Source: Phyllobates terribilis (Eukaryota). From it: DNA of 64,000 nucleotides. The stretch covers positions 111,228,001 through 111,292,000 of the forward strand of contig NW_027362773.1 in the NCBI RefSeq assembly GCF_046119375.1, in the 5' to 3' direction. Both the position numbers and the translations under genes were made by a program. Below are positions 11,690-62,970 of the stretch, one piece after another. Position 1 is the first letter of the stretch. Each line of letters starts with the position of its first letter. The notes beneath the pieces were generated by a model. It worked only from the letters and a program-made list of their open reading frames with translations. It ran no database searches and had not been told where the DNA came from.

Positions 11690-11825
11690 NNNNNNNNNNN
11701 NNNNNNNNNNNNNNNNNNNNNNNNNNNNNNNNNNNNNNNNNNNNNNNNNNNNNNNNNNNNNNNNNNNNNNNNNNNNNNNNNNNNNNNNNNNNNNNNNNNN
11801 NNNNNNNNNNNNNNNNNNNNNNNNN
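11690..11825. other. Assembly gap (N run)
   Basis: Run of N. Confidence 1.
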
Positions 11826-14423: not shown

Positions 14424-14576
14424 NNNNNNNNNNNNNNNNNNNNNNNNNNNNNNNNNNNNNNNNNNNNNNNNNNNNNNNNNNNNNNNNNNNNNNNNNNNNN
14501 NNNNNNNNNNNNNNNNNNNNNNNNNNNNNNNNNNNNNNNNNNNNNNNNNNNNNNNNNNNNNNNNNNNNNNNNNNNN
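14424..14576. other. Assembly gap (N run)
   Basis: Run of N. Confidence 1.
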
Positions 14577-14900: not shown

Positions 14901-15154
14901 GGTGAGGTGTGATGAGAGGGGGCTGCAGGGTGAAGTGTGAGTGCGGCCGGTCCTGAGTGGTGGTGGCCGCAGGGGGAGCAGGTCCTGAGTGGTGGTGGCC
15001 GCAGGGGGCGCTGTTCCTGGCCTCTCTTGCAGTGCTGGGTGCAGAGCAGTGTGATGGGTGCACCCCACCAGCTGTCAGTCTCTTTCTACAAGGACAGGGG
15101 TTGATTTTACACCATAAGTGGGACTCAAACCCCCCACCCCCCAAAAAAGGGGCA

Positions 15155-16228
15155 ATGCCAACTGCGGTGCGTTGCTCCTTTTTCCGTGTGGTCCTAGTCG
15201 CCCTCCTCCTCGTCGCGCTCCTCCAGCTCCTCTACCTCTCGCTTCTTTCTAACCTCCATGGACAGCAGCAGCAGCGCTCTGCCCACCCAGTACTGGCGGG
15301 CACACCCCGGGCAGAGCCAAGATGGCAGCGGGAGCAGAAGGACCACCTGAAAGCAGTGCTGGCGTCCGGTGGCGTCCTAGATACCGGGGGACAGTACCGC
15401 ATTTATCGCCATCTTTTGGCCCGTGAAGCTGCGCAGTCTAAAGATTTGGCGTTGGCGTCTCACGCCAGCCTGAGTAACCTGTGGCATCTGCAGGAGCTGG
15501 TACAGCGGTGGGATGGTCGGATCTCATTAGCGCTGTTTGCATCTAGCGGTGCCCAGGTGAAACTAGCCACTGTGCTGACCTATACCCTTGCCCAGCTGTG
15601 CCCGTCAGTGAGGCAGAGGGTATCCGTCCATCTGGTGTGCCAGTCCGGAGATTCAGCCGTCTTCTCGGAACAAGATGATGCAGCTGAGTTTGCCCATCTT
15701 CAGACCTGTCAGGCCGTCTTCGCCAAGGCAGCGAATCTGGGCACAAATATAATAAACTATGCAGGGAACACATCTTACCCCAACAACCTGCTACGAAACG
15801 TCGCCAGGGGCGGAACGGGCAATGCAGCCTTTGTACTGGTGCTCGATATCGATATGGTGCCCAGTCAGGGGCTGAGATCAGGCTTTTTAGATCTGGCCGC
15901 TCAGGGGGTTGATCCTCACCTGGTATTTGTGGTGCCAGCCTTTGAAATTAGACATACTAGGCGGCTGCCTGGCACCAAGGAGGAATTGCTGCGACTGTAT
16001 CAGGTGGGAGAAGTGCGAGCGTTTTATGAGGAGTTGTGCCCACGATGCCAAGCACCTACTAACTATTCAGTCTGGCTAAACCTACCGGAGAAGGACACTT
16101 CTGGCAGACTGGCGGTTGCCTATGTGGTGGAGTGGAGAGATCCCTGGGAACCGTTCTATATCGGGAGTAAGGATGTGCCAGCCTACGACGAGAGGTTCAA
16201 GCAGTACGGATTTAACAGGATCAGTCAG
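15155..16228 (+). CDS. B4GAT1: Beta-1,4-glucuronyltransferase 1, coding exon 1
   Basis: MPTAVRCSFFRVVLVALLLVALLQLLYLSLLSNLHG (type II TM anchor), YPNNLLRNVAR, VLDIDM (DxD), PWEPFYIG, YDERFKQYGFNRISQ|GTAAGG phase-0 donor. Confidence 0.97.
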
Positions 16229-17268
16229 GTAAGGTTCAGATAGATTTTATAAACACTGTGGTTTCTGTTTGGGGGCAAGTTGAAGGGAGTGTCCACTACT
16301 GTGATGCCCTTAGGGTAGGTCCTCAATATATGTTTAATGGGGGTCCGACAGCTGATACCTCTGGCAATTGCCAGATGTAAAGGGTGTATGGAGTGGAGCA
16401 AAACAGCGCTGCACACCGTGTAGTGGCTGCTGCCAGGTACTGCAGGTCAGCTCCTATTCACCTGAATGTGATCTGAGATCCAGTGCCCAGAGCTGGCTAC
16501 TATACATTGAACGGAGCTGTGCTGTTCGCTAAGTACACGGTATACATCCAGCCATCGCTGGAGCTAATAACTGCTGATTGTGGGGGTGCCACCTGTGTGA
16601 CCCCAACTAATCTAATATTTATGACCTATTGTGTGGGCTTCCCAGTAGTGGGCTTCTTCCCAATCTAAGATGTTAGAGTGCATCCTAGATTAGGTGCAGG
16701 AGTATGAAGAGGATGCCATACAAACCTGGTGCCAGCTGTGTTATACAGCCAGCACCGACTTCTTATAACAGCAACCAGAGGTGACATTAATTGCTGTCAT
16801 TTAACCATTTTGGTGCTGCTGTCATTTTATCACAGCGGCGTTGAATTAGTTGTGATCGGTCTGCGTTGTTGGGGGGGGGGGGGTTGTCTACTGAAGGCTC
16901 CAGATGCCGTTATCCTTGTACTCCCATGAAGCCCACCCTGTGTTATATACTACAGTATATAAAGACCACAGGATCAATTTCTCTAGGGAGATTTTATTAA
17001 TAAAAAAAAAAAAATGCAAGTTAGTTGAAAACCGTTTTTAAAGATATATAAAAGTCTAAACCGCTCTCCGTTTCCCCAATTTAAAAGTAAATTAAAAAAA
17101 TAATTTGGCATCACCGCCTGCATAGCTGTCTAATCTGTGAAATGATTAATTCTCTCCTATGCTATACAGAAAATTTAAACTGTCAAAATTGGTGTTTTTC
17201 GATCATCTCATCTTTAAAAAAAAATACGGTCATGAGCTCTGACAGTATCTTTGCTTTTTTTCCTGTAG

Positions 17269-22280: not shown

Positions 22281-22386
22281 ATGGATCCTGAAGCAGATTC
22301 AGCTACAGAAATGAACGGGCAAGATGAAGTGGACAGTGAGCGGGAGGACAGTGTCAGTCAGTCGGACTCCGAGGAGGAGAGCTCTG
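22281..22386 (+). CDS. BRMS1: BRMS1 coding exon 1 (exon begins ~22255)
   Basis: MDPEADSATEMNGQDEVDSEREDSVSQSDSEEESS, acidic N-terminus as in human (EGDSAAEMNGEEE...SEEESSE); phase-1 donor G|GTCTGT (weak). Confidence 0.85.
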
Positions 22387-23083
22387 GTCTGTGTTTGCCA
22401 TGTTATTTATTACGTTGTACTTCTGTATATCTGGCTGGAAACTTCTGCTTTATAAAAAGATGTTCCAAATCCATCAGAGATTCTGCTCCTGGTTGTGACT
22501 GCTTTCCTGGTTACTTAATACAAGAAATGGCAGCCGGGAGGGAGTTGTACACATTTACACATGGTGGAGAGGGGGCTAAGTATCTAGAGTCTCAAGGAGG
22601 GAAGAGGAAAAAGGCTTTGGAATAGGAGGAAATAAGTGCATCCTGAACTCTCACCCACCCTAGAGAAAAATAAGAAAATTGGATCTTTATGCAAACTTCT
22701 TATCGGTGGTCATCAGAAAAAAAAATGAAGATTACAGACGGAAACTCCATTTTTATTAATCCCCGATAACATATGTCTTTAAGTTCCATTTCTGCCCTGG
22801 TCAAATATGTAGTTAAAAAAAAAAAAATTAAACTGGAGGGAAAAAATTTAAAAGGTGCACGCACACACCTATCCTAGGGTTTTGGAGCAGAAACAGAAAC
22901 TTTCCAAACACTCCTTAAAAACTTGGATGCTGTGCCCTGAAAACTCTTCAGAAAAAAATAATTTAATATACAAATAATATAATTATTAGACGTCTTGGCA
23001 TTAGGATATTTTTTTTTTTATTTGTGTCAATGAAATCTGGTGCATTGTATGAGACCGGTTATTGCAATCTTTCCTTTTAACAG

Positions 23084-23174
23084 ATATGGATGACTTGGAT
23101 TGTGAACGTCGTAGAAATGAGTGTCTTGATGAGATGTGCCATCTGGAAAAACAGTTCTCAGAACTGAAGGAAAA
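23084..23174 (+). CDS. BRMS1: BRMS1 coding exon 2
   Basis: [30 protein letters not shown]; canonical AG/GT, 91 bp. Confidence 0.95.
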
Positions 23175-23545
23175 GTGAGTTTAAAAAAAAAAATAAAATA
23201 AAAAAAACTAGAAATACTGATAATTTATAAGCCAAAACCAGGAGTGGGTGATAAATGCAGAAGCGATGACGTGTTTCTATTAGACTTTTCCTCTGATTGT
23301 TCAACTCCTTGTTTTGGCTTATAAATACTGGTGTAAAATACTGAACGTGGCCTTAAGCTGATCGTAGACAGACTTTTGTCCATACAGAATCTATACAGAG
23401 TCCTACTGCAGATTAGGATTAGTTTTGATTATTCCCAGAGCTTGAATATTGTTCTACGTTAGTTTATTAACCCCCTTGGATTTGCAATGTATTACCATGA
23501 CTGAGATATGGATGGATGTATTCTACTGAAATATATTGTCTCCAG

Positions 23546-23673
23546 ATTATTTAAGGAACGATTAAGCCAGCTAAAAGCCAAATTGGAAGAGGTGACGTCC
23601 GGAAAAGCTTTGGAGTACATCAGTCCTCTTGCAGACTTACAGAAGAACATGAAAATCCGCATTGAAGTGGCAG
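23546..23673 (+). CDS. BRMS1: BRMS1 coding exon 3
   Basis: [42 protein letters not shown]; 128 bp. Confidence 0.95.
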
Positions 23674-23756
23674 GTAGCATCTTATTTCCATTCTGGTGCG
23701 GTCGCTGCCACCACTGGACAGATTTCTCCAGGAGTCATGTCTGTCTCTTATTTTAG

Positions 23757-23836
23757 GCATCTATAAGGGATTTTGTTTGGATGTCATCAAAAACCGATAT
23801 GAATGTGAACTGCAGGGTGCAAAGCAACATTTAGAG
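23757..23836 (+). CDS. BRMS1: BRMS1 coding exon 4
   Basis: GIYKGFCLDVIKNRYECELQGAKQHLE; 80 bp. Confidence 0.95.
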
Positions 23837-24088
23837 GTAAGGAAGTCTTCTGCCTTTCTGTTTCCTCCACTTCCACAGGGTTCTCTGCAAATACCCTATG
23901 GGCAGGGGTCACCCCAGCTCTTCGCATTTAGACAGAGCTGGGGGAAAGGGAGAATGGCTTGAAAGTGCCAGAAATTGCATTTGTTTGCATAACTTCGTGC
24001 TGTGGCAAAAAAAAAAAATGCAACTTTTAATTTTTTTAATTACAAGAAATGTAGCAAAAATCTTTGAACCACCCCAAAGTCTTTTTAA

Positions 24089-24624
24089 AGGGAACCTGTC
24101 AGCAGGATTTTGCTAAGTAAACTACAGGCAGTGTCATGTTCGGGCTGCTGCACTGATTAAAATGATACCTGAAGTGAAGAAATCAGTCTTGTGGTTCTTG
24201 TGTAATCAGTGTTTTCAGTTTTGAGTTAATGATATACTCGTGCTCCGGGGCGGGCCTGTAGGCTGGTCTCATCTTGCGCTCTAGGCCAGATCAGACAGAA
24301 AACACGGGCCTTCCCCGAAGCACAAGTATGTTCCTCATCATAGAGACAGACAGCCAGCCAGGGTCTGCCTGAGTCTCTCTGAATATACTTGTGCTTCGGG
24401 GCGGGCCCGTGGGCAGGTATTTTCTTGCTGATCTGGCCTAGAGCACAAGATGAGACCTGCCTATAGGACTGCCCCGTAACACGAGCATATCATTAACTCA
24501 AAGCTGCAAACACTGATTACACAAGGCGGGTTTCTTCACCTCAGGTATCATATTAATCAGTGAAGCAGCTTCAACATGATGATGCCTGTAGCTTACTTGG
24601 CAAAATCATGCTGACAGGTTCCCT
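24089..24624. mobile_element. T2-type palindromic TTAA MITE in BRMS1 intron
   Basis: TTAA|AGGGAACCTGTCAGCA ... TGCTGACAGGTTCCCT|TTAA with long internal inverted symmetry. Confidence 0.85.
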
Positions 24625-25435
24625 TTAAGATGCTGGTGGACCTGCTGAGTTTCTCAAAACAAAGACTTCTGAAAATCACCAGTGGTTTCTTTTCCTGAAG
24701 GTCTTTTTTTTTTCCTTTTTTCTTCCGCCTGTCAAACGGAAGAACGGTCAAGTCACTTTCAGACACTTCATGGCTTTCGCATCTTGAAGCGATTGAAAGA
24801 GGTGACCAAAGACTGACCATATGTACAAGTGCTTTTGACACTGCTGTGCATTAGGTTCATTCTTTGTATTGTGTTTTGTGCACTTACCCTTAACGTTTAA
24901 TTTTCTTCTGTCTATTGGTTTGTTCAATTTGAGTTAAAGGGAATCTGTCAGTAGGATCAGCCCTCCTAAGCCATCTCTATCCTCATGTAGGTCATAGGAA
25001 GCTGAATAAAGTGATACCTTGATATCTGTGATCTGATGTCTTATTCCAGAGAAATGCATGTTTTTATTATATGTAAATGAGCTGTTAAGATCTATGGGCC
25101 GGACATGGATCTCTCTGAGAATCAGCCTCCAGAGCTGCTTATAAATGAAAGGGAGCATTACCAGTGTGAGACATGTAATGACTGACAGTCAGCTCTCCTG
25201 ATCTCACTGCAGAGCTGTGTGTGATTATAACTGACACATCTGCAGGTTCCTCTCAGCTTCCATCTCACTGGCCAGCAGAGCTGTGAGAGCTGCAGCTGCT
25301 AACGTGTTTGTTTAGAGACAAAGCTCAGTTCTTCTCTTCTGTTACACATCTCGCACTGCTAATAAAACCTTCATTACTAGAATATCATATTCACTGTTAT
25401 ATCGTTCATTTACACATGTATTTTGCTGTTTCCAG

Positions 25436-25532
25436 AGTGAGAAGATCCTGCTGTTCGATAACATGCAGTGTGAGCTTCTAGAGCGGATCCAGAGGCTGGA
25501 GGAAGATCGGCAGAGCATCGACATTTCATCCG
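25436..25532 (+). CDS. BRMS1: BRMS1 coding exon 5
   Basis: [32 protein letters not shown]; 97 bp. Confidence 0.95.
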
Positions 25533-25897
25533 GTATGAAACCTCATCAGAGTATATTGTGTAAATACCGCCTTATATTGTACACTGATTTTTTTTGTAAG
25601 ATACACTAATGCTTACTTGTACAGTTCCCACATGTATCCGACACTTGTGGGTGCTGTCACTCTGGAGGAATCGGGAAGGGCATGTGCTATAATGCTACTT
25701 TATGTGGAGAATGCCGGCTCGTGCCAGGCCAGCAGATTTTCCATTGATGGATGCTAACTGCTAGCGCTTCAATAGTTAAACAGTAAGAAAAACGGAGAGA
25801 AAATTGCATTAGAAAATAAACTAAAGAGGTTTCTCATCCTATGGGGCAGCATAGTCTTCACCCAGCATAAACAGCTTGCATGTTTTTCATTCATTAG

Positions 25898-25990
25898 AGT
25901 GGTGGGATGAAGAATTAAGGTCAAAACGAAGCCGCAGAAAATGGGATTCATTCCGATCTGAGAAGAAGAGGAGGGTCCCATTGGTTTCTG
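25898..25990 (+). CDS. BRMS1: BRMS1 coding exon 6
   Basis: EWWDEELRSKRSRRKWDSFRSEKKRRVPLVS; 93 bp. Confidence 0.93.
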
Positions 25991-26874
25991 GTATCCTTTA
26001 CATGATCTGCCGTATATTGTAAGTTTATCTAGTTTTGCTGGAACAGTAATAGTGTGTGATGGCAGAATCCTGACCCATCTACATCATTTGTTTTGCGTCA
26101 GCACAAAATGACTGTTCAAACCAAACACAGGCGCTCGGTGCACCCTTGACGTGGTGGCTGAATCGTTCAGTGCTCCCTTTCCATCAATCTACATCCTCCC
26201 CTGCCCCCTGTAAAGCCAGGGCCGTCAATCAAGAAAGAAGTGAGGAAATAAATACCTACTGAACTGCTCTACAGAGATAAGGGTGCGTCAAGCGCCTGTA
26301 TATATGGACCATGGTGCTGGCTGTGGGGATCCAGACCCAAATTTGATAGCCACAAATGGAGGCTGTTGAGTTGGGGCCTGGAGAGCATTACGGATGTGTG
26401 AATTCAGCCTAACCTTTTTTAAGGTTGTCTGTGTGTCTTTTCTGTTTCTTTTGTTTGTTTTTTTTACTTTATTGGTCATGGTCAGCTAACTTAATGCTTT
26501 GAAGGGCCGGGCTTTTACAGATGCTGCATTATCAAATTTATTTAGACTTTTTTTTTGAGTGGGGGAGTGACTTTTTTTATTTTATTCTTTTAATTACGTG
26601 TTTTAACATCTTGTACTATACATCTAGGGATATGTTGGGTTGAGGAAGGACACCTTGGTATCCATGTCGACAGGCCTTCACTTCCGTGGCGGTTCACTGC
26701 GGTCAATAGTGAAGAAGATATAGTTGGTAGAAGACTGCTGGTTCCAGTGATTGGCAGCAGTGGTTAAAGTTACAGATATTTCTATTTTGGCTCATTGTAT
26801 AAACGCTCTGCTAACATCGCTGTTCATTTCTGATCTCTATGTAAAGATGTAGTTCTCCTTGACTGTTACACTAG

Positions 26875-26939
26875 GTCCTTATATTGTATACATGCTGCGG
26901 GATTTGGATATCCTGGAGGACTGGACGGCTATCAAGAAG
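26875..26939 (+). CDS. BRMS1: BRMS1 coding exon 7
   Basis: [22 protein letters not shown]; phase-0 donor AAG|GTAACT. Confidence 0.95.
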
Positions 26940-27664
26940 GTAACTGATCCGGTCTGTAATCTATATGTGCAGGGAATGTTGCTGCACATAACACTCATCC
27001 ATGCAAATGTGATAACCCTTTGTATTAGATGACCGATCCTGGGAACATAATGAACACTTTTTTCCCCTTCTCCCATGACAGCACCACCTGAGAGAGGGTA
27101 TCCGCCCACCAAGGACAGGAACCTACTGAATAAAAAGGCGGTACCTCTCCTCCGCATCAGTTTTGGTTCCTGTCCCTGATGGGAGCCTCACCAGGTGGTA
27201 CCTCACGTACCTGGATTATGGACGGTGCGGCCTGGAGGCCGTGGAAGCAGCAGATGGTCCCTGTTTCCAGCCCGTCTGGCTGCTGCCCGGGTCTGCGGGT
27301 GGGGAGGAGGTGCTGTTTTTTTGGATTCCTCCCCGCGTGCGCCGGGGCCTGCGGCCGGGTCTGCGCCTCGCAAAGACTAACTGAGCGCGCCGGCCGGCAG
27401 GTCTTCCGGGCTGCGCACGTGGGGGTCGCGTCGCACCCTGTGACGGAGCGCGCCGGAAGTCCGGGCTGCGCACGCGCGGGGTGCTGACGCGCCCTATCAC
27501 GGAGTGCGCCGGAAACCGGGTCTGCGCATGCGCGGGTGGGAAGCTGTCATCCCGCTGCAAGCGCGCCGGGTGCCGCTGGGCTGCGCACGCGCAGAGGCAG
27601 GTGGATCTGCGGGTAGCGTGCCAGCTGGCTAAAAAAATTTAAAAAAAAAAAAAAGAGATTTGAG

Positions 27665-29378
27665 ATGAGCACGCTGCCGGAAGGGGAGGAGCCTAAAGGA
27701 GGTGGAGCCCTACTGCTTTTAAGGATGGGGAGCAATCAGGATGGCGGTGTCTGCATCCCCGCCATGATGGATGAGGAACCGCAGTCACCTGGGCAGCAGC
27801 TGTCACCGCCACAGGAAGTACAGCAGCAGCCACAGCCATCAAAGCAGCGCAAGCAGCTCAAACAAATGGAACGGGAATCTTCCCATCGACAAAGTCACAG
27901 CAGTGAGGGGCGTACGAGTTCCGGCAAGACTGGTCAGAAAAGACTTCGTCAGTCCACCTCCGCCAGATGGGAGCCCTCATGTGAACGGCAACCACCGCCT
28001 CCGGTACCCTAGTCTGAACGGCAGTGTGGTGAATGATCTTCGTGAAAGTCTCACCTTGAATAATGTGCTCTTCTCTCTCTCTCTCTTTTCCTCCTTCTTC
28101 TCCTTTTATTTCTTGGGGCAGGAGGCAAAGAAGTGTAGTGCTAAAAGTAAAAACAGGGAGTGTGCTTTATGCAAAATCGGTCTTCCCACCTTCTATGCCA
28201 AAAACCTATGCTCGGACTGTATTCAGAAAACCATTGCAGAGGAGTCCCCCAGGTTTTCTTTAGAATTAAAGGATCTAATCCAGACAGAGGTCAGAGAGTC
28301 TTTAAGAGGCTTAACCTCACTCAAAAAGAAGAAGCGAAAACTAGTTTCTTCAGAATCAGAGGAATCAGTGGAGTCCCGTTTTACGAGAGAACTGCCTTCC
28401 TCCTCTAATCACTCCTCATCGTCATCGGAGTCTTCGGATGATGATGGGGGGGGCAGACCTTGTTTTTCGGTTGATAATACTGAGAGAGTAGTTAAAGCCG
28501 TCAGAGGGACTATGGGTATTACCGATACCAAAGTGCCCAGAACAGTCCAGGATGTTCTGTTCGGGGGCTTAGACCAAAGGAGGAGACGCTCATTCCCGGT
28601 CAATGACAGGATTAAATCTCTGATAGAAAGGGAATGGAAGAAACCGGAGAGGAAGGGTCAGCTGCCGTCATCCTCCAAGCGGAGGTACCCCTTTGAGGAT
28701 GAGGATGCGGCTAAATGGGACAAAACCCCTAAGATTGACGTGGCCATTTCAAAATCTTTAAAAAAATCCACTCTGCCCTTTGAGGATTTAGGAGCCTTAA
28801 AAGACCCGCTGGATAAAAAAGCGGAGTCCTTCCTTAAGCAAACCTGGGAGTCGTCAGCAGGGGCCCTTAAACCGGCAGTAGCAGCGACCTGCACTGCTAG
28901 ATCTATGATGATCTGGCTTCAACAATTGGAAGACCAGATCAGGGGGAATGTGTCCAGGGAGAAAATTCTATCAGACCTTCCTCTTGTGCAGGGAGCGGCT
29001 GCATTCCTGGCAGATGCATCGGCAGATTCAGTTAGGCTGGCTGCCCGGTCTGCAAACCTCTCTAATGCAGCCCGTAGGGCGCTATGGCTCAAGAGCTGGC
29101 CAGGAGATGTGCAGTCAAAGTCTAAACTGTGCTCAATCCCTTGTGAGGGGGACTTCTTGTTCGGCAAAGGTCTAGATGACATCCTAGATAAAGCCGCAGA
29201 CAAAAAACATGGATTTCCCACGGTGTCTGGTTCCCGATTTAACAGTTCCTTTCGGAAGAGAAAATACAGCCGCAGTAAAGCTCCCAGAGACCAAGGTAGC
29301 TGGAAAGACCGAAAGCCGTATAGCAGAGGCTTCATGTTTGGGGGTCCCTCCTCCGAGAATAAGAAAGCCCCTAAGTGA
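27665..29378 (+). CDS. DIRS gag-like ORF1 (probably spliced 27665-28003 + 28122-29378)
   Basis: C-X2-C-X12-C-X2-C motif (CALC...CSDC) and DIRS ORF1-like segments (LKDPLDKK, AARRALWLKSWPGD, LFGKGLDDIL); the splicing is inferred. Confidence 0.75.
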
Positions 29379-31276
29379 CAGTCCCCCCCCCAGGTGGGGG
29401 GGAAGATTGTCCCACTTCCTGCCTGCCTGGAAGGAAATTTCATCCAATTCTTGGATCTTAGGGATAATCAGGAGGGGGCTCACATTAGAGTTCAAAAGCA
29501 GGCCCAAGAACACTGTCAAAATATCAGCCCCCAGAGGTTTAGCGGAACAGATAGCCTTACAGCAGGAAGTTCTCTCTCTGCTCATGAAAGAAGTTCTGGT
29601 GGAAACACCTGCACCCGAGCAAGGAAGAGGATTCTATTCGACCCTCTTCCTAATAAAGAAGCCAGACTGCTCCTTCAGGACCATTGCGAACTTAAAGAGA
29701 CTGAACGACCATTTAATCTACAGGCCTTTCAAGATGGAAACAATAAAATCGGCCATAAAGATGTTATTTCCGGACTGTTTTATGTGCGTCCTCGATCTGA
29801 AGGATGCCTACTACCACGTCCCGATTTTGCCAGATCATCAACAGTTTCTAAGAGTAGCTGTACAATTCGGCAGGCACGTAAGGCATTTTCAGTTCGCAGC
29901 TCTTCCCTTTGGCATTTCCATGGCGCCGAGAGTCTTCACAAAAATCATTCTGGATGTCACAGCGCACTTGAGGGAAAGAGATATTTTGGTCATCCCTTAT
30001 CTGGACGACTTCTTAGTAGTGGGCAGATCAAGTCAACTCTGTGCTCTAGCCCTGGCGGACGTCATGGCCAGTCTAAGACGCCTAGGTTGGCTGTTAAATC
30101 TGGAGAAGTCAAGGCTGGAACCAAAGAGGGTTCAGTCTTTCCTGGGTCTCATTCTGGACTCAGAAAACCAAATCTGTCTTCTGCCAGAGGAAAAGAAACT
30201 GAAGATCAGATCCCTAACATCTCAGGTTGTCAGCAATCCGACCATGACCCTGAGGAGTGCAATGTCTCTGTTGGGTACAATGACGTCTTGCATCCCGGCG
30301 GTTCAGTGGGCCCAGCACCATTCCAGATGTCTTCAACAGGAGATTCTGGCAGCGGACAGGCGGCTCAAAGGTCGCCTGAATGGGAAAATATCTCTTCCAG
30401 ATGTTGTGATCAACTCCCTGGACTGGTGGACATCTCCGGTCAACCTATCTTTGGGGGTTCCTTGGACCTTCCAGGTGTCGGATACAATTACAACAGACGC
30501 AAGTGCGGAAGGTTGGGGAGCTCACCTAAGGGATCGTTCTGTACAAGGCCTCTGGTCGGACAGCGAGACAAGTCTCTCTTCCAACATGAAAGAGCTGTTG
30601 GCAGCCAGAAACGCGCTAAAAGAATTCAGTTCTGTTCTTCAGGGTCCTCACGTCAGGATAATGTCAGACAACAGATCAACAGTCGCCTACATCAATCATC
30701 AGGGGGGTACCAGGTCTCTCCCTCTGATGTTAATAGCGGATCAGATCTTCAGGTTTGCCGAGAGTCGGCTGGTTACGCTCTCGGCACTGCATATAAAAGG
30801 GGAAGAAAACATAAAGGCCGATTTCTTGAGTCGTCACATCTTGAAACAAGGAGAGTGGGAGTTGAATCCAGCCGTTTTTCAGCAGATTGTGGATCGGTGG
30901 GGACAGCCCCAGATAGATCTGTTTGCAAACAGACACAATCGGAAGACCGAAACCTTTTGCTCCCTGAATCCAAAAGAGGGGGCGTTTGCGGTGGACGCAC
31001 TGCAGATTCAGTGGGATTTCACTCTAGCTTATGCCTTTTCCCCCTTTAGTACTGATCCCTACTATCCTGAGGAAGATCCGAGAGGAACGGGCGAGGGTTA
31101 TATTGATCGCCCCGTTCTGGCCCAAGAGACCATGGTTCACTTGGATGAAGAGAATGTCCCAAGCAGATCCATGGGTTCTTCCGGACATCCCGGATCTCCT
31201 CAGGCAGGGCCCAGTCTGTCATCCCCAAAGAGCGGGCCTGCATTTGACTGCTTGGATTTTGAGAGGTCGCTATTGA
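29209..31276 (+). pseudogene. DIRS pol (RT, RNase H, DNA methyltransferase-like), frameshifted at ~31036-31039
   Basis: LDLKDAYYHVPI, YLDDFLVVG, TTDASAEGWGAH, MSDN, DLFA; the methyltransferase-like tail FPPLVLIPTILRKIREERARVILIAPFWPKRPWF is in the +1 frame (ORF 31031..31276). Confidence 0.88.
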
Positions 31277-32295
31277 CGCAAAGGGGGTTTTCTCCGGATC
31301 TTGTTACTACCCTTCTAGCAAGTAGAAAGCAGATAACAACTAGAATCTATGGTAGAACCTGGGCTAAGTTCTTGTCTACCTCGGGTCAGTCTGCCAAAGG
31401 GAGGATTCCTATTGAGGCCATACTAGAATTTCTCCAGAAGGGGTTAAACATGGGACTAGCCACCAGTACTCTTAAGGTACAGGTATCGGCTCTGGGGGCA
31501 CTGTATAATTATGACTTGGCAGCAAATAGATGGATCATTAGATTTATTAAAGCCTGTCATAGATCCAGACCTATTCCTGTTCCAAGAATGCCTCCTTGGG
31601 ACCTTAATTTAGTTCTGGAAGCATTAACCAAACCTCCCTTCGAGCCCTTAGAGAAGGTTTCAGAAAAAATCTTAACTTTAAAGACTGCGCTATTGGTGGC
31701 CCTGACATCAGCTCGTAGAGTCAGTGACTTACACGCACTATCCGTTAACCATCCATTCACTCAAGTATGTATGGATAGAGTAATCTTAAGACCAGACCCG
31801 GCCTATCTTCCAAAGGTAGCCTCCAAGTTCCATAGGACGCAAGTAATCACTCTCCCTTCCTTCTATCCTAATCCTAGGGATTCTGAGGAACATAAGCTTC
31901 ACACCTTAGATGTTAAGAGGGTGTTAGTCCAGTATTTGGAAGTGACAAAAGCCTGGAGAAAGAGTGACGCTTTATTTATATCCTTTCAGGGGGCTAGGAA
32001 AGGACTTAAGGTTACAAGGGGGACCATAGCTAGATGGGTCAGGGATACTATTACCTTAGCCTACTCTTCTAGCAATCTGCCGGTTCCTGAGAACCTGAAG
32101 GCCCATTCCACCAGAGCGGTAGCTGCTTCCTGGGCTGAGAAGGCGGATGTGCCCATCGACATTATATGTAAGGCGGCAACTTGGTCATCCCCCGCTACAT
32201 TTTACAAACATTACCGTCTTGACCTTTCCTCTTCTACTGATCTGTCCTTTGGTAGAAGGGTGTTGCAAGCGGTGATCCCTCCCTCTGGTATTTGA
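29394..32295 (+). pseudogene. DIRS tyrosine recombinase ORF overlapping pol, split by the same frameshift
   Basis: N-terminal overlap part is ORF 29394..31049; catalytic part has TSARRVSDL, HTLDVKR, HSTRAVAAS and ATWSSPATFYKHY (R-H-R-W-Y). Confidence 0.88.
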
Positions 32296-33934
32296 TCTCT
32301 ATAAATCTCTCAGGTGGTGCTGTCATGGGAGAAGGGGAAAAGATCCTAGTTACTTACCGGTAACGGGATTTTACAGAGCCCATGACAGCACCCTATTAAT
32401 TCCCTCCCCTTTATCACTGTGGTGTGCACTTTTTTTAAGGTGTTTAGTACATATGTTGAGGTGGTGGTTATGTATTAACCTGTCTTCGGAGGCCCTCTCA
32501 TGCTCTGAAACAAAACTGATGCGGAGGAGAGGTACCGCCTTTTTATTCAGTAGGTTCCTGTCCTTGGTGGGCGGATACCCTCTCTCAGGTGGTGCTGTCA
32601 TGGGCTCTGTAAAATCCCGTTACCGGTAAGTAACTAGGATCTTTTTTTTTTTTTTTTTTTTTTTAAACTATACCCTCATGCGAGCATTATAGGGTGTATG
32701 TAAAAAAAAATCCTCATTTGAGTACAAAAAAAATGAAAAAAATCTCATCACTGTCCTGCCTCCTCTAAAGAATAGTCTCCAAAGTTCAAACTATTTAATA
32801 TCAAATTTAACCTATATGGAAAATGCTGTATAGGGCGGGAATGCCAAAACTGCTGTTTTTCAGTTGATGCCCCCAAAAAAGTAAAACAAAAAAAATAATA
32901 ACTTTTATCAAGTGATCTAAGTCTGTGAATGCTCAGTAATGGCCTGACATGTTTGCTATGACAGATGTCGTACCCTTCAGCTATTACTTTTTCAACATCA
33001 AGTCTGATATGGACAGGAGAGAAGCTGTGGGGTCACGGGACCCTGCGCTGGGATCCTGTCTAGTAGGATTTACTTGGCTGAGAAACCTGGAGAAATACAG
33101 GTCTGCCGGGAAGCGAAATGCAATTACAGTGCAGATTTTACTTCTTACCCACCCACCTAAAGAGATTGTCATCAGAAAATGAAAAAATTTTTTGTGTTGA
33201 ATGGATAGAAATATAGCCATTTTCACACCTGCTACTGGATGTGTTTTTTTTTTTTTTTTTTTTTTTTTAAATCTATCTTCCTGATGTTTCAGGAAATAAC
33301 ACATGTACATAGCCACAGTGGGCCGGACTCTGTCCTTTCTATTGAAGCATTTAATGAGCGTGTGCAAAGGTCATTGTGAAGGGAGGGGGTGCTGTGACAT
33401 TGCCTATTGTGATTGCTGTGTATAGAGGTGTCATTGTATTCCTGCCTTTGATAAGGCGCCTGCTGAAAACTCTTCCCGAACAGATGGGAAATATACGTTT
33501 ACAAAAAAAAAAAATCCCTGTGGCAAGTGTGAAAAAATACAGGATTGATCATTTTTGAAGGAGGCCCTACCGCCACTATTCTCTCCAGTATTTAAGTTAC
33601 TAAACCGCCGTAATGGGAGTTTCACAACCTCAGCGTTGTCCATAAAAACCCCTACCCGAACTTTATTCCAAAGTTTATTTTTTTTGTACCAGAACTTCAA
33701 CCAGAACCCGAACCCCATTGAAAACGGTGAGGACCCAAACTTTTGAGGCAGAAAACTTTTGCTCTGTCTCTTTCTTTCTCTTATCCCGGAACTTTGAACA
33801 TTGCAATGGAGGTCATAGACTTTCTTAACACCTCCATTTTTCTTCTTATGTGTTTTCCCATTATTATGCATGTAAAGGTCTGTTGTTTGGATTCACTTTG
33901 GTTTTTTTTGTTTTTTTTTTTGCTTCCTTCTCAG

Positions 33935-33974
33935 GCCAAAGCATCCGTTTCCCCACAAAAGCGAAAATCTGACG
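33935..33974 (+). CDS. BRMS1: BRMS1 coding exon 8
   Basis: AKASVSPQKRKSD (human ARAAVSPQKRKSD); long pyrimidine tract, donor G|GTAAGG. Confidence 0.93.
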
Positions 33975-36894: not shown

Positions 36895-37026
36895 NNNNNN
36901 NNNNNNNNNNNNNNNNNNNNNNNNNNNNNNNNNNNNNNNNNNNNNNNNNNNNNNNNNNNNNNNNNNNNNNNNNNNNNNNNNNNNNNNNNNNNNNNNNNNN
37001 NNNNNNNNNNNNNNNNNNNNNNNNNN
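36895..37026. other. Assembly gap (N run)
   Basis: Run of N. Confidence 1.
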
Positions 37027-59439: not shown

Positions 59440-62400
59440 TATTTAGTCTCTCTGTAAGGGGTGCATGCGTCTTCTTGTGCAAAGTGGCTTCGGAGAGAAG
59501 TGGCAGTTATTTCAGAGGCAGTTAGTCAGGGCAGGAGTCAGGTAACAAACACTTTGACCACTCACTCTCTTTTAACTATGTTTCTGTTAGCTCTCACTTT
59601 TTCCTCTATAGTCCTCCACTTTCTAATAACCCCTCAAATCCCTACACCAAGTAAGAAACTCTTCATCTCTCCCTCTATCCTCCCCATTCATCTCACCTCC
59701 TCCTCCAAATTATTCCTCAACATTCAATCCTGGATCTCCAAACACAGACAGCCACCTCATGCTCTCTCCTGTTCCCACCTGCTAACACTTTCTCTGCTCC
59801 TCCTCACTGCTGGAGATATCTCTCCAAATCCTGGTCCTCCTCACCATATCCCCACAGTCACTTCTACCTCCTATCCACGACCTTCCTCAAACTGTCGCAA
59901 CCCTTCTAACCTCATACCCATCCAACTAATACCCACCTCCTCAGCTATACTAACAGGAGCTCTATGGAACGCTCGCTCTGTCTGCAACAAACTTTCCTTC
60001 ATCCACGATCTTTTCATTACAAACAAACTCTCCTTCCTCGCCATCACCGAAACCTGGCTCACCCCCTCTGACACAGCCTCCCCAGCTGCCCTTTCATATA
60101 GCGGATTCCACCTTTCCCACACCCCCCGCCCCAATGGCAAACATGGTGGAGGCGTAGGTTTCCTCCTATCAGAACTCTGCGCTTTCACCCAAATCCCACT
60201 GCCACCTTCCGTTACACTCCCCTCTTTTGAGGTGCACTGTGTGCGCATCTATTCCCCCTCCAACCTCCAACTGGCCGTCATTTACCGACCACCAGGGCAA
60301 GCCACCATCTTCTTAGACCATTTCACTACCTGGCTGCTTCACTTCCTTTCCACTGACATCCCCACTATCATAATGGGTGACTTCAACATCCCCATTGACA
60401 CTCCCCACTCGTCTGTCTCTAAGCTCCTATCCCTCACTTCCTCCTTTGGACTCACTCAATGGTCTTCCACACCCACCCACAAAGATGGCCACACACTGGA
60501 CCTCATCTTCACCCGCCTATGTTCCCTATCTAACCTCTCTAACTCACCACTCCCTCTCTCTGACCATAACCTCCTCACATTCTCTACCCTCTCCTCTCCG
60601 GGTGCACAATCCCCACTCCACAAACTCACACACCCTCGCAGAAATCTCAAACACCTTGACCTACACTCTCTCTCTGAATCCCTCCTTCCTCTAACAGACA
60701 TAAATTCCTTACACGATGCAGACGTTGCTGCTGCTTCATATAACACCACAATAGCTTCAGCTCTAGACTCAATCGCCCCTCTCACACACACCACACCTTG
60801 CACATTCAACAGGCAACCCTGGCACACTAAACTTACCAAAGAACTGCGCCGGGCCTCCAGGGTTGCGGAGCGGAGATGGAAAAGGTCTCACTCCATCGAG
60901 CACTTCATCGCATTCAAGCAATCCCTCACTAATTTCAAGTCCGCACTCACTACAGCAAAACAAACCTACTTCTCATCTCTCATATCCTCCCTATGTCACA
61001 ACCCTAAACAGTTATTTAACACTTTCAACTCTCTCCTTCGTCCCCCAGCACCTCCTCCCTCTTCTCTCATCTCAGCCGACGACTTTGCCTCGTTCTTCAA
61101 ACAGAAGATTGACACCATCAGACAAAACTTTGGCCTAAAGTCCACACAACCCCTCCTCATATCTACTCAACCCTCCTCCTCCAAACCCCACTTCTCCACC
61201 ATTACAGAAGGTCAAGTCTCCTCTTTACTCTCCAAATCACACCTCACCACCTGCGAACTTGACCCAATCCCATCCCACCTCATCACTAACCTCACCACAG
61301 TCTTCATCCCAACCCTAACCCACCTCTTCAATCTATCACTAACAACCGGAGTCTTCCCCTCATGTTTCAAACATGCCGCAATCACACCCATCCTCAAAAA
61401 GCCCTCCCTTGACCCTTCCTCTCTGACTAGCTACCGCCCCATATCACTCCTCCCCTTTGCCTCAAAACTTCTAGAACAACATGTCCACCTTGAACTGTCC
61501 TCCCACCTCTCCTCCTGCTCCCTCTTTGACCGTCTACAATCTGGCTTCCGACCGCATCACTCGACTGAAACTGCCCTGACCAAAGTCACCAACGACCTAC
61601 TAAATGCCAAATCCAAGCAACACTACTCCATCCTCCTCCTTCTGGACCTGTCATCTGCCTTTGACACAGTGGACCATTCCCTCTTACTCCAGATTCTCTC
61701 ATCTCTTGGCATCACGGACTTGGCTCTATCTTGGATCTCCTCATACTTAACAGACAGGACATTCAGCGTCTTCCACTCACGCACCACCTCCTCATCTCGC
61801 CCCCTATCTGTCGGTGTCCCCCAAGGTTCAGTTCTAGGACCTCTGCTCTTCTCCATCTACACCTTCGGCCTGGGACAGCTCATAGAGTCTCACGGCTTTC
61901 AGTATCACCTCTATGCCCGCGACACACAGATCTACCTCTCTGGACCCGATATCTCCTCCCTACTAACCAGAATCCCACAATGTCTGTCCGCCATCTCATC
62001 CTTCTTCTCCGACAGATTTCTAAAACTCAACATGGATAAAACTGAGTTCATCATCTTTCCACCCTCTCATTCACATCCCCCATCCGACCTATCCATCAAC
62101 GTCAATGGCTGTTCACTCTCCCCAGTCCCACAAGCTCGCTGCCTTGGGGTAACCCTGGATTCTGATCTCTCCTTCAAGCCACATATCCAAGCCCTTTCCA
62201 CCTCCTGCCGACTCCAACTCAAAAACATCTCCCGGATCCGTGCATTCCTCAGCAAAGACTCTGCAAAAACACTAGTGCATGCCCTCATCATATCCCGCCT
62301 CGACTACTGCAACCTCCTGCTCCGTGGCCTCCCTTCCAACACTCTTGCACCTCTCCAATCTATCCTAAACTCTGGTGCTCGACTAATCCACCTGTCCCCC

Positions 62401-62970
62401 CGCTATTCCCCGGCCTCTCCTCTCTGTCAATCCCTTCACTGGCTCCCCATTGCCCATAGAATTCAGTTCAAAACCCTAACCATGGCATACAAAGCCATCC
62501 ACAACCTGTCTCCCCCATACATCTGTGACCTAGTCTCCCGGTACTTACCTGCACGCAACCTCCGATCCTCACAAGATCTCCTTCTCTACTCCCCTCTTAT
62601 CTCCTCCTCCCACAATCGTATACAAGATTTCTCCCGTGCTTCCCCCCTACTCTGGAACTCTCTACCCCAACATATCAGACTCTCGCCGACCGTGGAAACC
62701 TTCAAAAGGAACCTGAAGACCCACCTTTTCCAACAAGCCTACAACCTGCAGTAAACACCACTGCACGACCAGCTCTACCCTCACCTACTGTATCCTCACC
62801 CATCCCTTGTAGACTGTGAGCCCTCGCGGGCAGGGTCCTCGCTCTTCCTGTACCAGTCGCTGACTCGTTTTGTTAAGATTATGTAAATGCTTTTGTTATG
62901 TATATCCCTATCACATGTAAAGCGCCATGGAATAAATGGCGCTATAATAATAAATAATAATAATAATAAA
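59440..62970 (+). mobile_element. Near full-length L2-clade LINE in RIN1 intron (sense orientation)
   Basis: Uninterrupted ORF, 3' hairpin AGCGCCATGGAATAAATGGCGCT and (TAA)n tail; 5' boundary approximate. Confidence 0.93.
59578..62754 (+). CDS. L2 ORF: hydrophobic leader, 2A-like motif, APE endonuclease, RT
   Basis: WNARS, ITETWL, IYRPP, MGDFN, LDL, SDH (APE); [37 protein letters not shown] and YARD in place of YADD (RT). Confidence 0.9.

What the first reader, a model, noticed from the sequence alone, without database searches (positions are those of the whole stretch)
26875..29378. Predicted in-frame BRMS1-Gag fusion via the DIRS splice acceptor
Seen: BRMS1 exon 26875-26939 ends at a phase-0 donor. 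The sense-oriented DIRS 120 bp downstream carries a very strong-looking acceptor: a ~45-nt pyrimidine tract, no AG from 28049 to 28119, then CAG| at 28121. The next base (28122) starts a codon in the open gag frame (EAKKCSAK...stop at 29378). Inference: splicing 26939->28122 would encode BRMS1 aa 1-220 (the coiled-coil/Sds3 region that binds SIN3-HDAC) fused to 418 aa of Gag with a CxxC..CxxC motif, in place of the normal C-terminus. This acceptor lies about 5.8 kb closer than the native one at 33935, so the insertion may divert or truncate BRMS1 transcripts.
Basis: partly seen in the sequence, partly recalled or inferred. Interest (0 to 1): 0.75.

Follow-up and report, generated by a model that had tools for sequence, protein, structure and literature searches.

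The report
DIRS gag acceptor inside BRMS1 intron
A young DIRS retrotransposon sits in sense orientation in an intron of the poison frog BRMS1 gene, and its own conserved gag-intron splice acceptor could join BRMS1 to Gag in frame, but the RNA assemblies available show only the normal BRMS1 splice.

Summary
The sequence observation holds. BRMS1 coding exons 22281-26939 sum to exactly 220 codons and end at a phase-0 donor. A full-length DIRS1-type element (27060-32645) starts 120 bp downstream, in sense orientation. An AG-free, pyrimidine-rich stretch (28049-28119) precedes CAG|28122, which opens a 418-codon Gag frame.

The acceptor is not a chance feature. It is the 3' splice site of the element's own phase-0 gag intron (28004-28121). 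RefSeq models of at least 8 paralogous Phyllobates terribilis copies use exactly this junction. Four other divergent DIRS families on public contigs carry a GT-AG intron at the same place and phase.

The fusion itself is unsupported. In RNA contigs of 4 runs from 2 studies, the only junction assembled from exon 26875-26939 is the canonical one to 33935. No 26939->28122 joint was seen, and no BRMS1-Gag protein turned up in protein searches. By a rough weight matrix the native acceptor is much stronger.

Contigs cannot exclude a minor isoform, and the genotype of the RNA donors is unknown.

The geometry matches what Abascal et al. 2015 inferred for the DIRS Gag capture that created LAP2alpha and ZNF451-L2a. 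First readers of this scan noted DIRS gag introns on other DNA of this genome; those notes were unchecked.

The parts
22281..22386 (+). BRMS1 first coding exon (ATG at 22281)
   Evidence: MDPEADSATEMNGQ..; donor GTCTGT
23084..23174 (+). BRMS1 coding exon 2
   Evidence: PDB 4AUV/2XUS BRMS1, E 3.9e-7
23546..23673 (+). BRMS1 coding exon 3
   Evidence: weak Sds3 (E 0.007) and 2XUS (E 0.04) matches
23757..23836 (+). BRMS1 coding exon 4
   Evidence: AG/GT boundaries with consistent phase
25436..25532 (+). BRMS1 coding exon 5
25898..25990 (+). BRMS1 coding exon 6
   Evidence: Its 3' end is the loose end seen before 26874 in the RNA contigs of all four runs.
26875..26939 (+). BRMS1 coding exon 7. It ends codon 220 at a phase-0 donor AAG|GTAACT.
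27060..32645 (+). Full-length DIRS1-type retrotransposon, same strand as BRMS1
27060..27169 (.). Left inverted terminal repeat. It contains an AATAAA on the + strand at 27129.
   Evidence: (I1 99% over 98 nt; I3)
27665..28003 (+). DIRS gag exon 1 (113 codons, MSTLPEGEE..QPPPP), followed by donor CCG|GTACCC
   Evidence: (RefSeq models)
28004..28121 (+). DIRS gag intron: 118 nt, GT-AG, phase 0. It has stop codons in the exon-1 frame, a pyrimidine tract and an AG-free zone 28049-28119.
28122..29378 (+). DIRS gag exon 2: 418 codons plus stop. It holds CxxC..CxxC and a LAP2alpha-type domain (aa 155-361).
29209..32295 (+). DIRS pol ORF (RT, RNase H, tyrosine recombinase), 1028 codons
32306..32392 (.). 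Internal complementary region, complementary to both element termini
   Evidence: I2 and I3, both 100%
32507..32645 (.). Right inverted terminal repeat
33935..33974 (+). Native next BRMS1 exon (AKASVSPQKRKSD..). Its acceptor is the strongest AG in the intron.

Best explanation
A young, structurally complete DIRS1-type retrotransposon inserted in sense orientation 120 bp into the intron after BRMS1 codon 220 in Phyllobates terribilis.

The pyrimidine tract plus CAG at 28121 is the 3' splice site of the element's own short phase-0 intron. That intron separates a small ATG-bearing gag exon 1 (27665-28003) from the main gag exon (28122-29378).

The BRMS1 donor at 26939 is also phase 0, so splicing from it into this acceptor would be in frame. 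The product would be BRMS1(1-220)-Gag(418). This follows from the two phases and is not a selected design.

In practice BRMS1 is spliced normally across the 7-kb intron to the much stronger native acceptor at 33935. A BRMS1-Gag transcript is at most a minor, so far unobserved, by-product.

Shown: the anatomy, the phases, conservation of the DIRS intron, and the canonical junction in RNA. Inferred: that the DIRS acceptor is used in vivo, and that BRMS1 pre-mRNA uses it rarely.
For: Anatomy and phases.

The acceptor belongs to the element:
- RefSeq protein XP_073532658.1 (P0001, 98% identical) equals exon 1 plus exon 2, joined QPPPP|EAKKCSAK. Its gene span of 1716 nt implies an intron of about 120 nt.
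- Nine of the 11 cluster members, all at separate loci, carry the same junction.
- Four other DIRS gag families, 36-45% identical at the protein level, have an ATG exon of 19-23 codons, a phase-0 GT-AG intron of 80-113 nt and a pyrimidine tract. Their exon 2 starts about 11-15 codons before the CxxC motif.
- Reading through unspliced from the exon-1 ATG hits a stop in 4 of the 5 families.

Normal splicing prevails:
- In all 4 runs (2 studies) a contig covers 26875-26939. Its loose end on the left is the end of exon 25898-25990. Its loose end on the right is the start of exon 33935.
- The intron flank 26650-26849 has no depth, and no 26939->28122 joint is listed.
- Rough weight matrix: 28122 scores 6.6 bits, 4th of 514 intronic AGs. 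33935 scores 12.9 bits, 1st.
- No BRMS1-Gag protein appeared among hits of 230-731 aa or in the profile search.
Against: No read-level RNA evidence was available. The runs are kept as contigs, which drop rare variants.

The contigs show neither the fusion nor splicing of the DIRS intron itself. Contigs run unspliced into 28004-28121 from both sides (27684-28055 and 28108-28442). Use of the acceptor therefore rests on RefSeq gene models and comparative conservation.

Whether the RNA donors carry this insertion is unknown. The DIRS donor CCG|GTACCC is weak (-2.1 bits). A frame-0 ORF from ATG 27771 reads through the intron, so Gag could also be made without splicing.

My weight matrix uses approximate frequencies from memory. 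It is not MaxEntScan.
Confidence: 0.72

Rival explanations
1. One reading: the DIRS acceptor captures a meaningful share of BRMS1 transcripts. This would produce a BRMS1(1-220)-Gag fusion protein or truncate BRMS1.
For: The splice is in frame, and the acceptor lies 5.8 kb closer than the native one. It is probably a real splice site. It scores above the six other BRMS1 acceptors. Poly(A) hexamers lie at 29652 and 29742, just after the gag stop. DIRS Gag became a terminal alternative exon of TMPO and ZNF451 (PMC4495291).
Against: Only the canonical junction is assembled in 4 runs from 2 studies. The native acceptor is far stronger. No BRMS1-Gag protein model was found. Use of the poly(A) hexamers is untested, and contigs run through them.
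Confidence: 0.12
2. The CT tract plus AG is not a functional splice site. Gag would be translated unspliced from ATG 27771 (535 aa, with the tract coding LFSLSLFSSFF..), and the RefSeq introns would be gene-model artefacts.
For: Frame 0 is open from 27771 through the tract. RNA contigs are unspliced there. One RefSeq model (P0063) starts inside the intron. In L001 the intron has a length divisible by 3 and is open. The donor is weak.
Against: GT, AG, phase 0 and a pyrimidine tract are kept at the same place in five families whose intron and exon-1 sequences are otherwise unrelated. L001 has TACTAAC. In L002, L006 and L008 the intron carries a stop or a frameshift. The frame-0 upstream peptide has no relatives among the hits.
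Confidence: 0.1
3. The insertion affects BRMS1 mainly by premature polyadenylation. Candidate sites are AATAAA at 27129 in the left ITR and sites inside the element. The result would be truncated transcripts rather than a fusion.
For: AATAAA or ATTAAA on the + strand at 27129, 28265, 28611, 29652, 29742 and 31546.
Against: Hexamers at this density are expected by chance. Canonical full splicing is seen in all runs, and no contig ends are reported at these sites.
Confidence: 0.05

Closest known systems
TMPO/LAP2alpha and ZNF451-L2a: mammalian isoforms whose terminal exon derives from a DIRS1-like gag (Abascal, Tress, Valencia 2015; PMC4495291)
   Same: A DIRS gag lies in sense orientation inside a host gene, and upstream host exons could splice into one large gag exon that replaces the normal C-terminus. 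Gag exon 2 here matches the solved LAP2alpha C-terminal domain (2V0X, E 3.5e-20; Pfam PF11560). The paper inferred that the colonizing element carried a splice acceptor plus a poly(A) signal. This element does carry a conserved acceptor directly before the gag core.
   Different: Here the element is a complete, young retrotransposon, not a domesticated exon. No chimeric RNA or protein is observed. No selection on the host-gag combination can be claimed. Homology of the mammalian exon boundary to this acceptor was not tested.
DIRS1-like retrotransposons of anurans (e.g. Xenopus families; PMC9210276)
   Same: ITRs plus an internal complementary region, a gag with a LAP2alpha domain, RT/RNase H and a tyrosine recombinase.
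   Different: The Xenopus survey describes ORF1 as a single ORF and never mentions introns or splicing. Here gag is split by a short phase-0 intron.
Intronic sense-oriented retroelement insertions that act as gene traps through their own splice acceptors (e.g. mouse IAP/ETn insertions; own knowledge)
   Same: A sense-oriented element with a functional acceptor sits in a host intron and could give aberrant terminal exons.
   Different: In those cases aberrant transcripts are documented and often cause phenotypes. Here only normal splicing is documented.

Membership tests
DIRS1-like (tyrosine-recombinase) retrotransposon | Reverse transcriptase and RNase H | tested here: met
   RVT_1 E 1.7e-14; RT_RNaseH E 1.3e-5
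DIRS1-like (tyrosine-recombinase) retrotransposon | Tyrosine recombinase instead of a DDE integrase | tested here: met
   Phage_integrase E 7.6e-5 (23 bits, just under Pfam's 27.1 cut-off) at the C-terminus of the pol ORF
DIRS1-like (tyrosine-recombinase) retrotransposon | [quoted passage not shown] | tested here: met
   I1 98 nt 99%; I2 55 nt 100%; I3 36 nt 100%
DIRS1-like (tyrosine-recombinase) retrotransposon | ORF1 (gag) with a LAP2alpha-type domain, as in vertebrate DIRS | tested here: met
   PF11560, E 2e-20; 2V0X, E 3.5e-20
BRMS1 orthologue | Sequence match to BRMS1 coiled coil / Sds3-like region | tested here: met
   4AUV/2XUS E 3.9e-7 for exon 23084-23174; weak Sds3 and 2XUS matches for the next exon. 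Tested exon by exon only.
BRMS1 orthologue | Short BRMS1-type C-terminus and synteny with B4GAT1 | tested here: inconclusive
   Exon 33935-33974 encodes AKASVSPQKRKSD. This resembles the human C-terminus as I recall it, which is memory and not a test. A Glyco_transf_49 ORF lies upstream.
U2-type spliceosomal intron (28004-28121) | GT..AG ends, pyrimidine tract, AG-free zone | tested here: met
U2-type spliceosomal intron (28004-28121) | Position and phase conserved in divergent relatives | tested here: met
   five families, all phase 0, introns of 80-118 nt
U2-type spliceosomal intron (28004-28121) | Spliced RNA observed | tested here: inconclusive
   RefSeq models use the junction, but the RNA contigs are unspliced there and no joint is listed
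Host-DIRS Gag chimeric isoform (LAP2alpha type) | Sense gag downstream of a phase-compatible host donor | tested here: met
Host-DIRS Gag chimeric isoform (LAP2alpha type) | Chimeric transcript or protein exists | tested here: not met
   only the canonical junction appears in 4 runs (contig level, so weak); no BRMS1-Gag protein.
Host-DIRS Gag chimeric isoform (LAP2alpha type) | Poly(A) site that ends the gag exon | not testable with these tools
   Hexamers at 29652 and 29742. Their use is unknown.

The most novel reading that the evidence does not exclude
Anuran DIRS elements carry a conserved phase-0 splice acceptor immediately upstream of the LAP2alpha-type Gag core. This would make every sense-oriented intronic copy a ready-made gene trap. 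It may be the very acceptor that Abascal et al. inferred for the independent captures that created LAP2alpha and ZNF451-L2a. On this reading the BRMS1 locus is a nascent case, with a low-level BRMS1(1-220)-Gag transcript.
Probability: 0.25. Interest if true: 0.7.

Novelty: new member of a known kind. Interest (0 to 1): 0.42.

Why it matters
If BRMS1-Gag transcripts exist, this locus would show the first step of a route already known to have produced LAP2alpha and ZNF451-L2a. In that route a DIRS gag exon is captured as an alternative terminal exon.

The more solid result is that DIRS gag genes in this frog, and in four divergent relatives on public contigs, are split by a conserved phase-0 intron. 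I found no paper describing this intron. It gives a concrete, testable basis for the 'element carried its own acceptor' inference of 2015.

It also raises the question of how a retrotransposon keeps an intron through reverse transcription. One possible answer is a balance between unspliced genomic RNA and spliced gag mRNA.

For BRMS1 itself the evidence says the gene is spliced normally.

Tried and rejected
- PDB search with the 21-aa exon peptide found nothing.
- Exon-by-exon Pfam gave only a sub-threshold Sds3 match. BRMS1 identity rests.
- DNA of the P0001 locus could not be fetched because the file is too large. The paralogue's intron was therefore inferred from gene span and protein.
- A profile search with 12 Gag sequences did not reach beyond hyloid frogs. 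It did not reach Xenopus, amniote DIRS or LAP2alpha. How widely the intron occurs, and whether the LAP2alpha exon boundary is homologous, stay open.
- The alignment tool printed a consensus line by itself.
- Literature searches for a DIRS gag intron found nothing.
- A word search of earlier findings for read-level checks found nothing.
- MaxEntScan and SpliceAI are not available. I used a rough weight matrix with frequencies from memory, so only its ranks are useful.
- The 535-aa frame-0 ORF was considered as the true gag and judged secondary (see rivals).
- GTGAGG at 27903 was considered as the donor. I rejected it because the RefSeq models use 28003.

Full report
**Observation**

Exon 26875-26939 follows an AG and is followed by GTAACT. 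It translates as ..[21 protein letters not shown] and ends on a full codon.

I located six further upstream coding exons: 22281-22386, 23084-23174, 23546-23673, 23757-23836, 25436-25532 and 25898-25990. All internal boundaries are AG/GT with consistent phases. Together with 26875-26939 they sum to 660 nt, exactly 220 codons.

Gene identity was tested exon by exon, without joining:
- Exon 23084-23174 matches the solved BRMS1 coiled coil (4AUV/2XUS, E 3.9e-7).
- The next exon gives weak Sds3 and 2XUS matches.
- A Glyco_transf_49 ORF (B4GAT1-like, E 4.5e-80) lies upstream on the same strand.

The next BRMS1 exon is 33935-33974 (AKASVSPQKRKSD..).

**The insertion**

27060-32645 is a complete DIRS1-type element on the + strand:
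- Terminal inverted repeats: 98 nt at 99%.
- An internal complementary region, 32306-32392, that matches both termini at 100%.
- A gag with a LAP2alpha domain (PF11560, E 2e-20; 2V0X, E 3.5e-20).
- A 1028-codon ORF with RT, RNase H and a phage-integrase-type recombinase.

It is the only copy in the window. The near-identical repeats and open frames indicate a young insertion. I did not build any consensus or repaired version. Copies were only compared.

**The acceptor**

The last AG before 28120 is at 28047. The stretch -45..-4 is 88% pyrimidine. CAG ends at 28121, and 28122 opens EAKKCSAK.., 418 codons to the stop at 29376-29378.

This acceptor is not a chance feature. The best protein match is RefSeq XP_073532658.1 of Phyllobates terribilis (98% identity, 531 aa). 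It identifies the organism. It equals the 113-codon ORF 27665-28003 joined directly to 28122 onward, with the junction QPPPP|EAKKCSAK. Its gene span of 1716 nt implies an intron of about 120 nt.

Nine of the eleven members of its cluster carry the same junction, and all eleven are at different loci. So 28004-28121 is annotated as a 118-nt GT-AG, phase-0 intron of gag. In the exon-1 frame it contains stop codons.

Four other DIRS gag families on public contigs have the same layout. These are L001, L002-L005, L006/L007 and L008/L009, at 36-45% protein identity (organisms not given). Each has:
- a short ATG exon of 19-23 codons;
- a phase-0 GT-AG intron of 80-113 nt with a pyrimidine tract (L001 also has TACTAAC);
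- an exon 2 that starts about 11-15 codons before the conserved CxxC..CxxC motif.

Unspliced read-through from the exon-1 ATG meets a stop in four of the five families. Neither the introns nor the exon-1 peptides show any evident similarity between families. Only the signals, position and phase are kept.

First readers of this scan noted such introns on other DNA of this genome and on this window. Those notes were unchecked. My comparison agrees with them.

**RNA evidence**

The only runs offered are kept as contigs. I laid four of them, from two studies, on 26650-32649.

In every run one contig covers 26875-26939:
- Its letters to the left are the end of exon 25898-25990. I found them at 25960-25989.
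- Its letters to the right are the start of exon 33935. One run carries a single-base variant there.
- The intron flank 26650-26849 has no depth.

The runs therefore contain spliced RNA, and the canonical junction 26939|33935 is confirmed in all four.

No 26939->28122 joint is listed. No 28003->28122 joint is listed either. Contigs run unspliced into the DIRS intron from both sides (27684-28055 and 28108-28442) and break at the low-complexity tract.

Two limits apply. Contigs drop rare variants, and 143 further loose ends were not shown. This is evidence that normal splicing dominates. It is not proof that the fusion is absent. It is also unknown whether these animals carry the insertion.

**Strength of the sites**

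MaxEntScan is not available. A rough weight matrix, with frequencies from memory, was used for ranking only. It gives 6.6 bits for 28122, above the six other BRMS1 acceptors (-0.3 to 5.4) and 4th of 514 AGs in the intron. The native 33935 site gets 12.9 bits, 1st.

GGGG at -7..-4 weakens the DIRS site. The element's own donor CCG|GTACCC is weak. That fits mostly unspliced element RNA.

**Protein databases**

A 638-aa BRMS1-Gag protein would have fallen within the length range (230-731 aa) and among the top word matches. None appeared there or in the profile search, although RefSeq proteins of this species are in the collection.

Some gene models in related frogs join other sequence to Gag exactly at this boundary (P0028). 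Most host-Gag models of Ranitomeya imitator join elsewhere and look like prediction artefacts.

**Mechanism**

Shown: the anatomy, both phase-0 boundaries, conservation of the DIRS intron, and canonical BRMS1 splicing.

Inferred: the acceptor is functional. BRMS1 pre-mRNA could use it occasionally, giving BRMS1(1-220)-Gag(418) that ends at the gag stop. Poly(A) hexamers at 29652 and 29742 could end such a transcript. The native acceptor wins in most transcripts.

The in-frame match is a consequence of the DIRS intron being phase 0. Any sense copy in a phase-0 host intron has the same geometry.

**Comparison with known cases**

Abascal et al. 2015 (PMC4495291) showed that the LAP2alpha-specific exon of TMPO and an alternative terminal exon of ZNF451 derive from a DIRS1-like gag. 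[quoted passage not shown]

The element here carries such an acceptor, conserved across families. A survey of Xenopus DIRS elements does not mention introns or splicing. My searches found no description of the intron. Whether the mammalian exon boundary is homologous to this acceptor could not be tested.

**Verdict**

As a BRMS1 finding this is an ordinary intronic transposon insertion with splice-trap potential. Its value lies in the conserved DIRS gag intron and the link to LAP2alpha-type capture.

I left out the search with the joined exon-gag junction sequence.

Noticed in passing
window 29393-31990: A fair donor CAG|GTGGGG lies 15 nt after the gag stop (29393|29394). The second-best acceptor of the whole intron (31989|31990, 8.8 bits by my rough matrix) lies inside the recombinase region. 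No such joint was listed in the RNA contigs.
   Followed up: partly
window 14957-16243 (+): A single-exon ORF of 428 codons has a Glyco_transf_49 domain (E 4.5e-80). It is probably B4GAT1, the neighbour of BRMS1 in mammals as far as I recall.
   Followed up: partly
proteins P0058, P0061, P0064, P0065 (RefSeq, P. terribilis): These gene models start with DIRS gag exons 1 and 2 but end in unrelated C-termini. Transcripts initiated in DIRS copies may therefore splice out of gag into flanking sequence, which would be chimeras in the opposite direction.
   Followed up: no
window 27090 and 32586: RNA contigs in several runs leave the element at these two mirror-image ITR positions. The letters they run into are reverse complements of each other (..GGTCGACC..). 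This points to a related ITR variant or another terminal form of the family (table 7).
   Followed up: no
window 27129: AATAAA on the + strand inside the left ITR lies 190 nt after the BRMS1 donor. It is a possible intronic poly(A) signal. Its use is untested.
   Followed up: no
L001 668-769: In this divergent DIRS family the gag intron is 102 nt, divisible by 3 and free of stops. It has a perfect TACTAAC. Both spliced and unspliced RNA would therefore encode a Gag.
   Followed up: partly
window 59461-62754 (+): An ORF of 1097 codons. I did not examine it.
   Followed up: no
window 11690-11825, 14424-14576, 36895-37026: Runs of N (gaps or masked stretches). I left them untouched.
   Followed up: no
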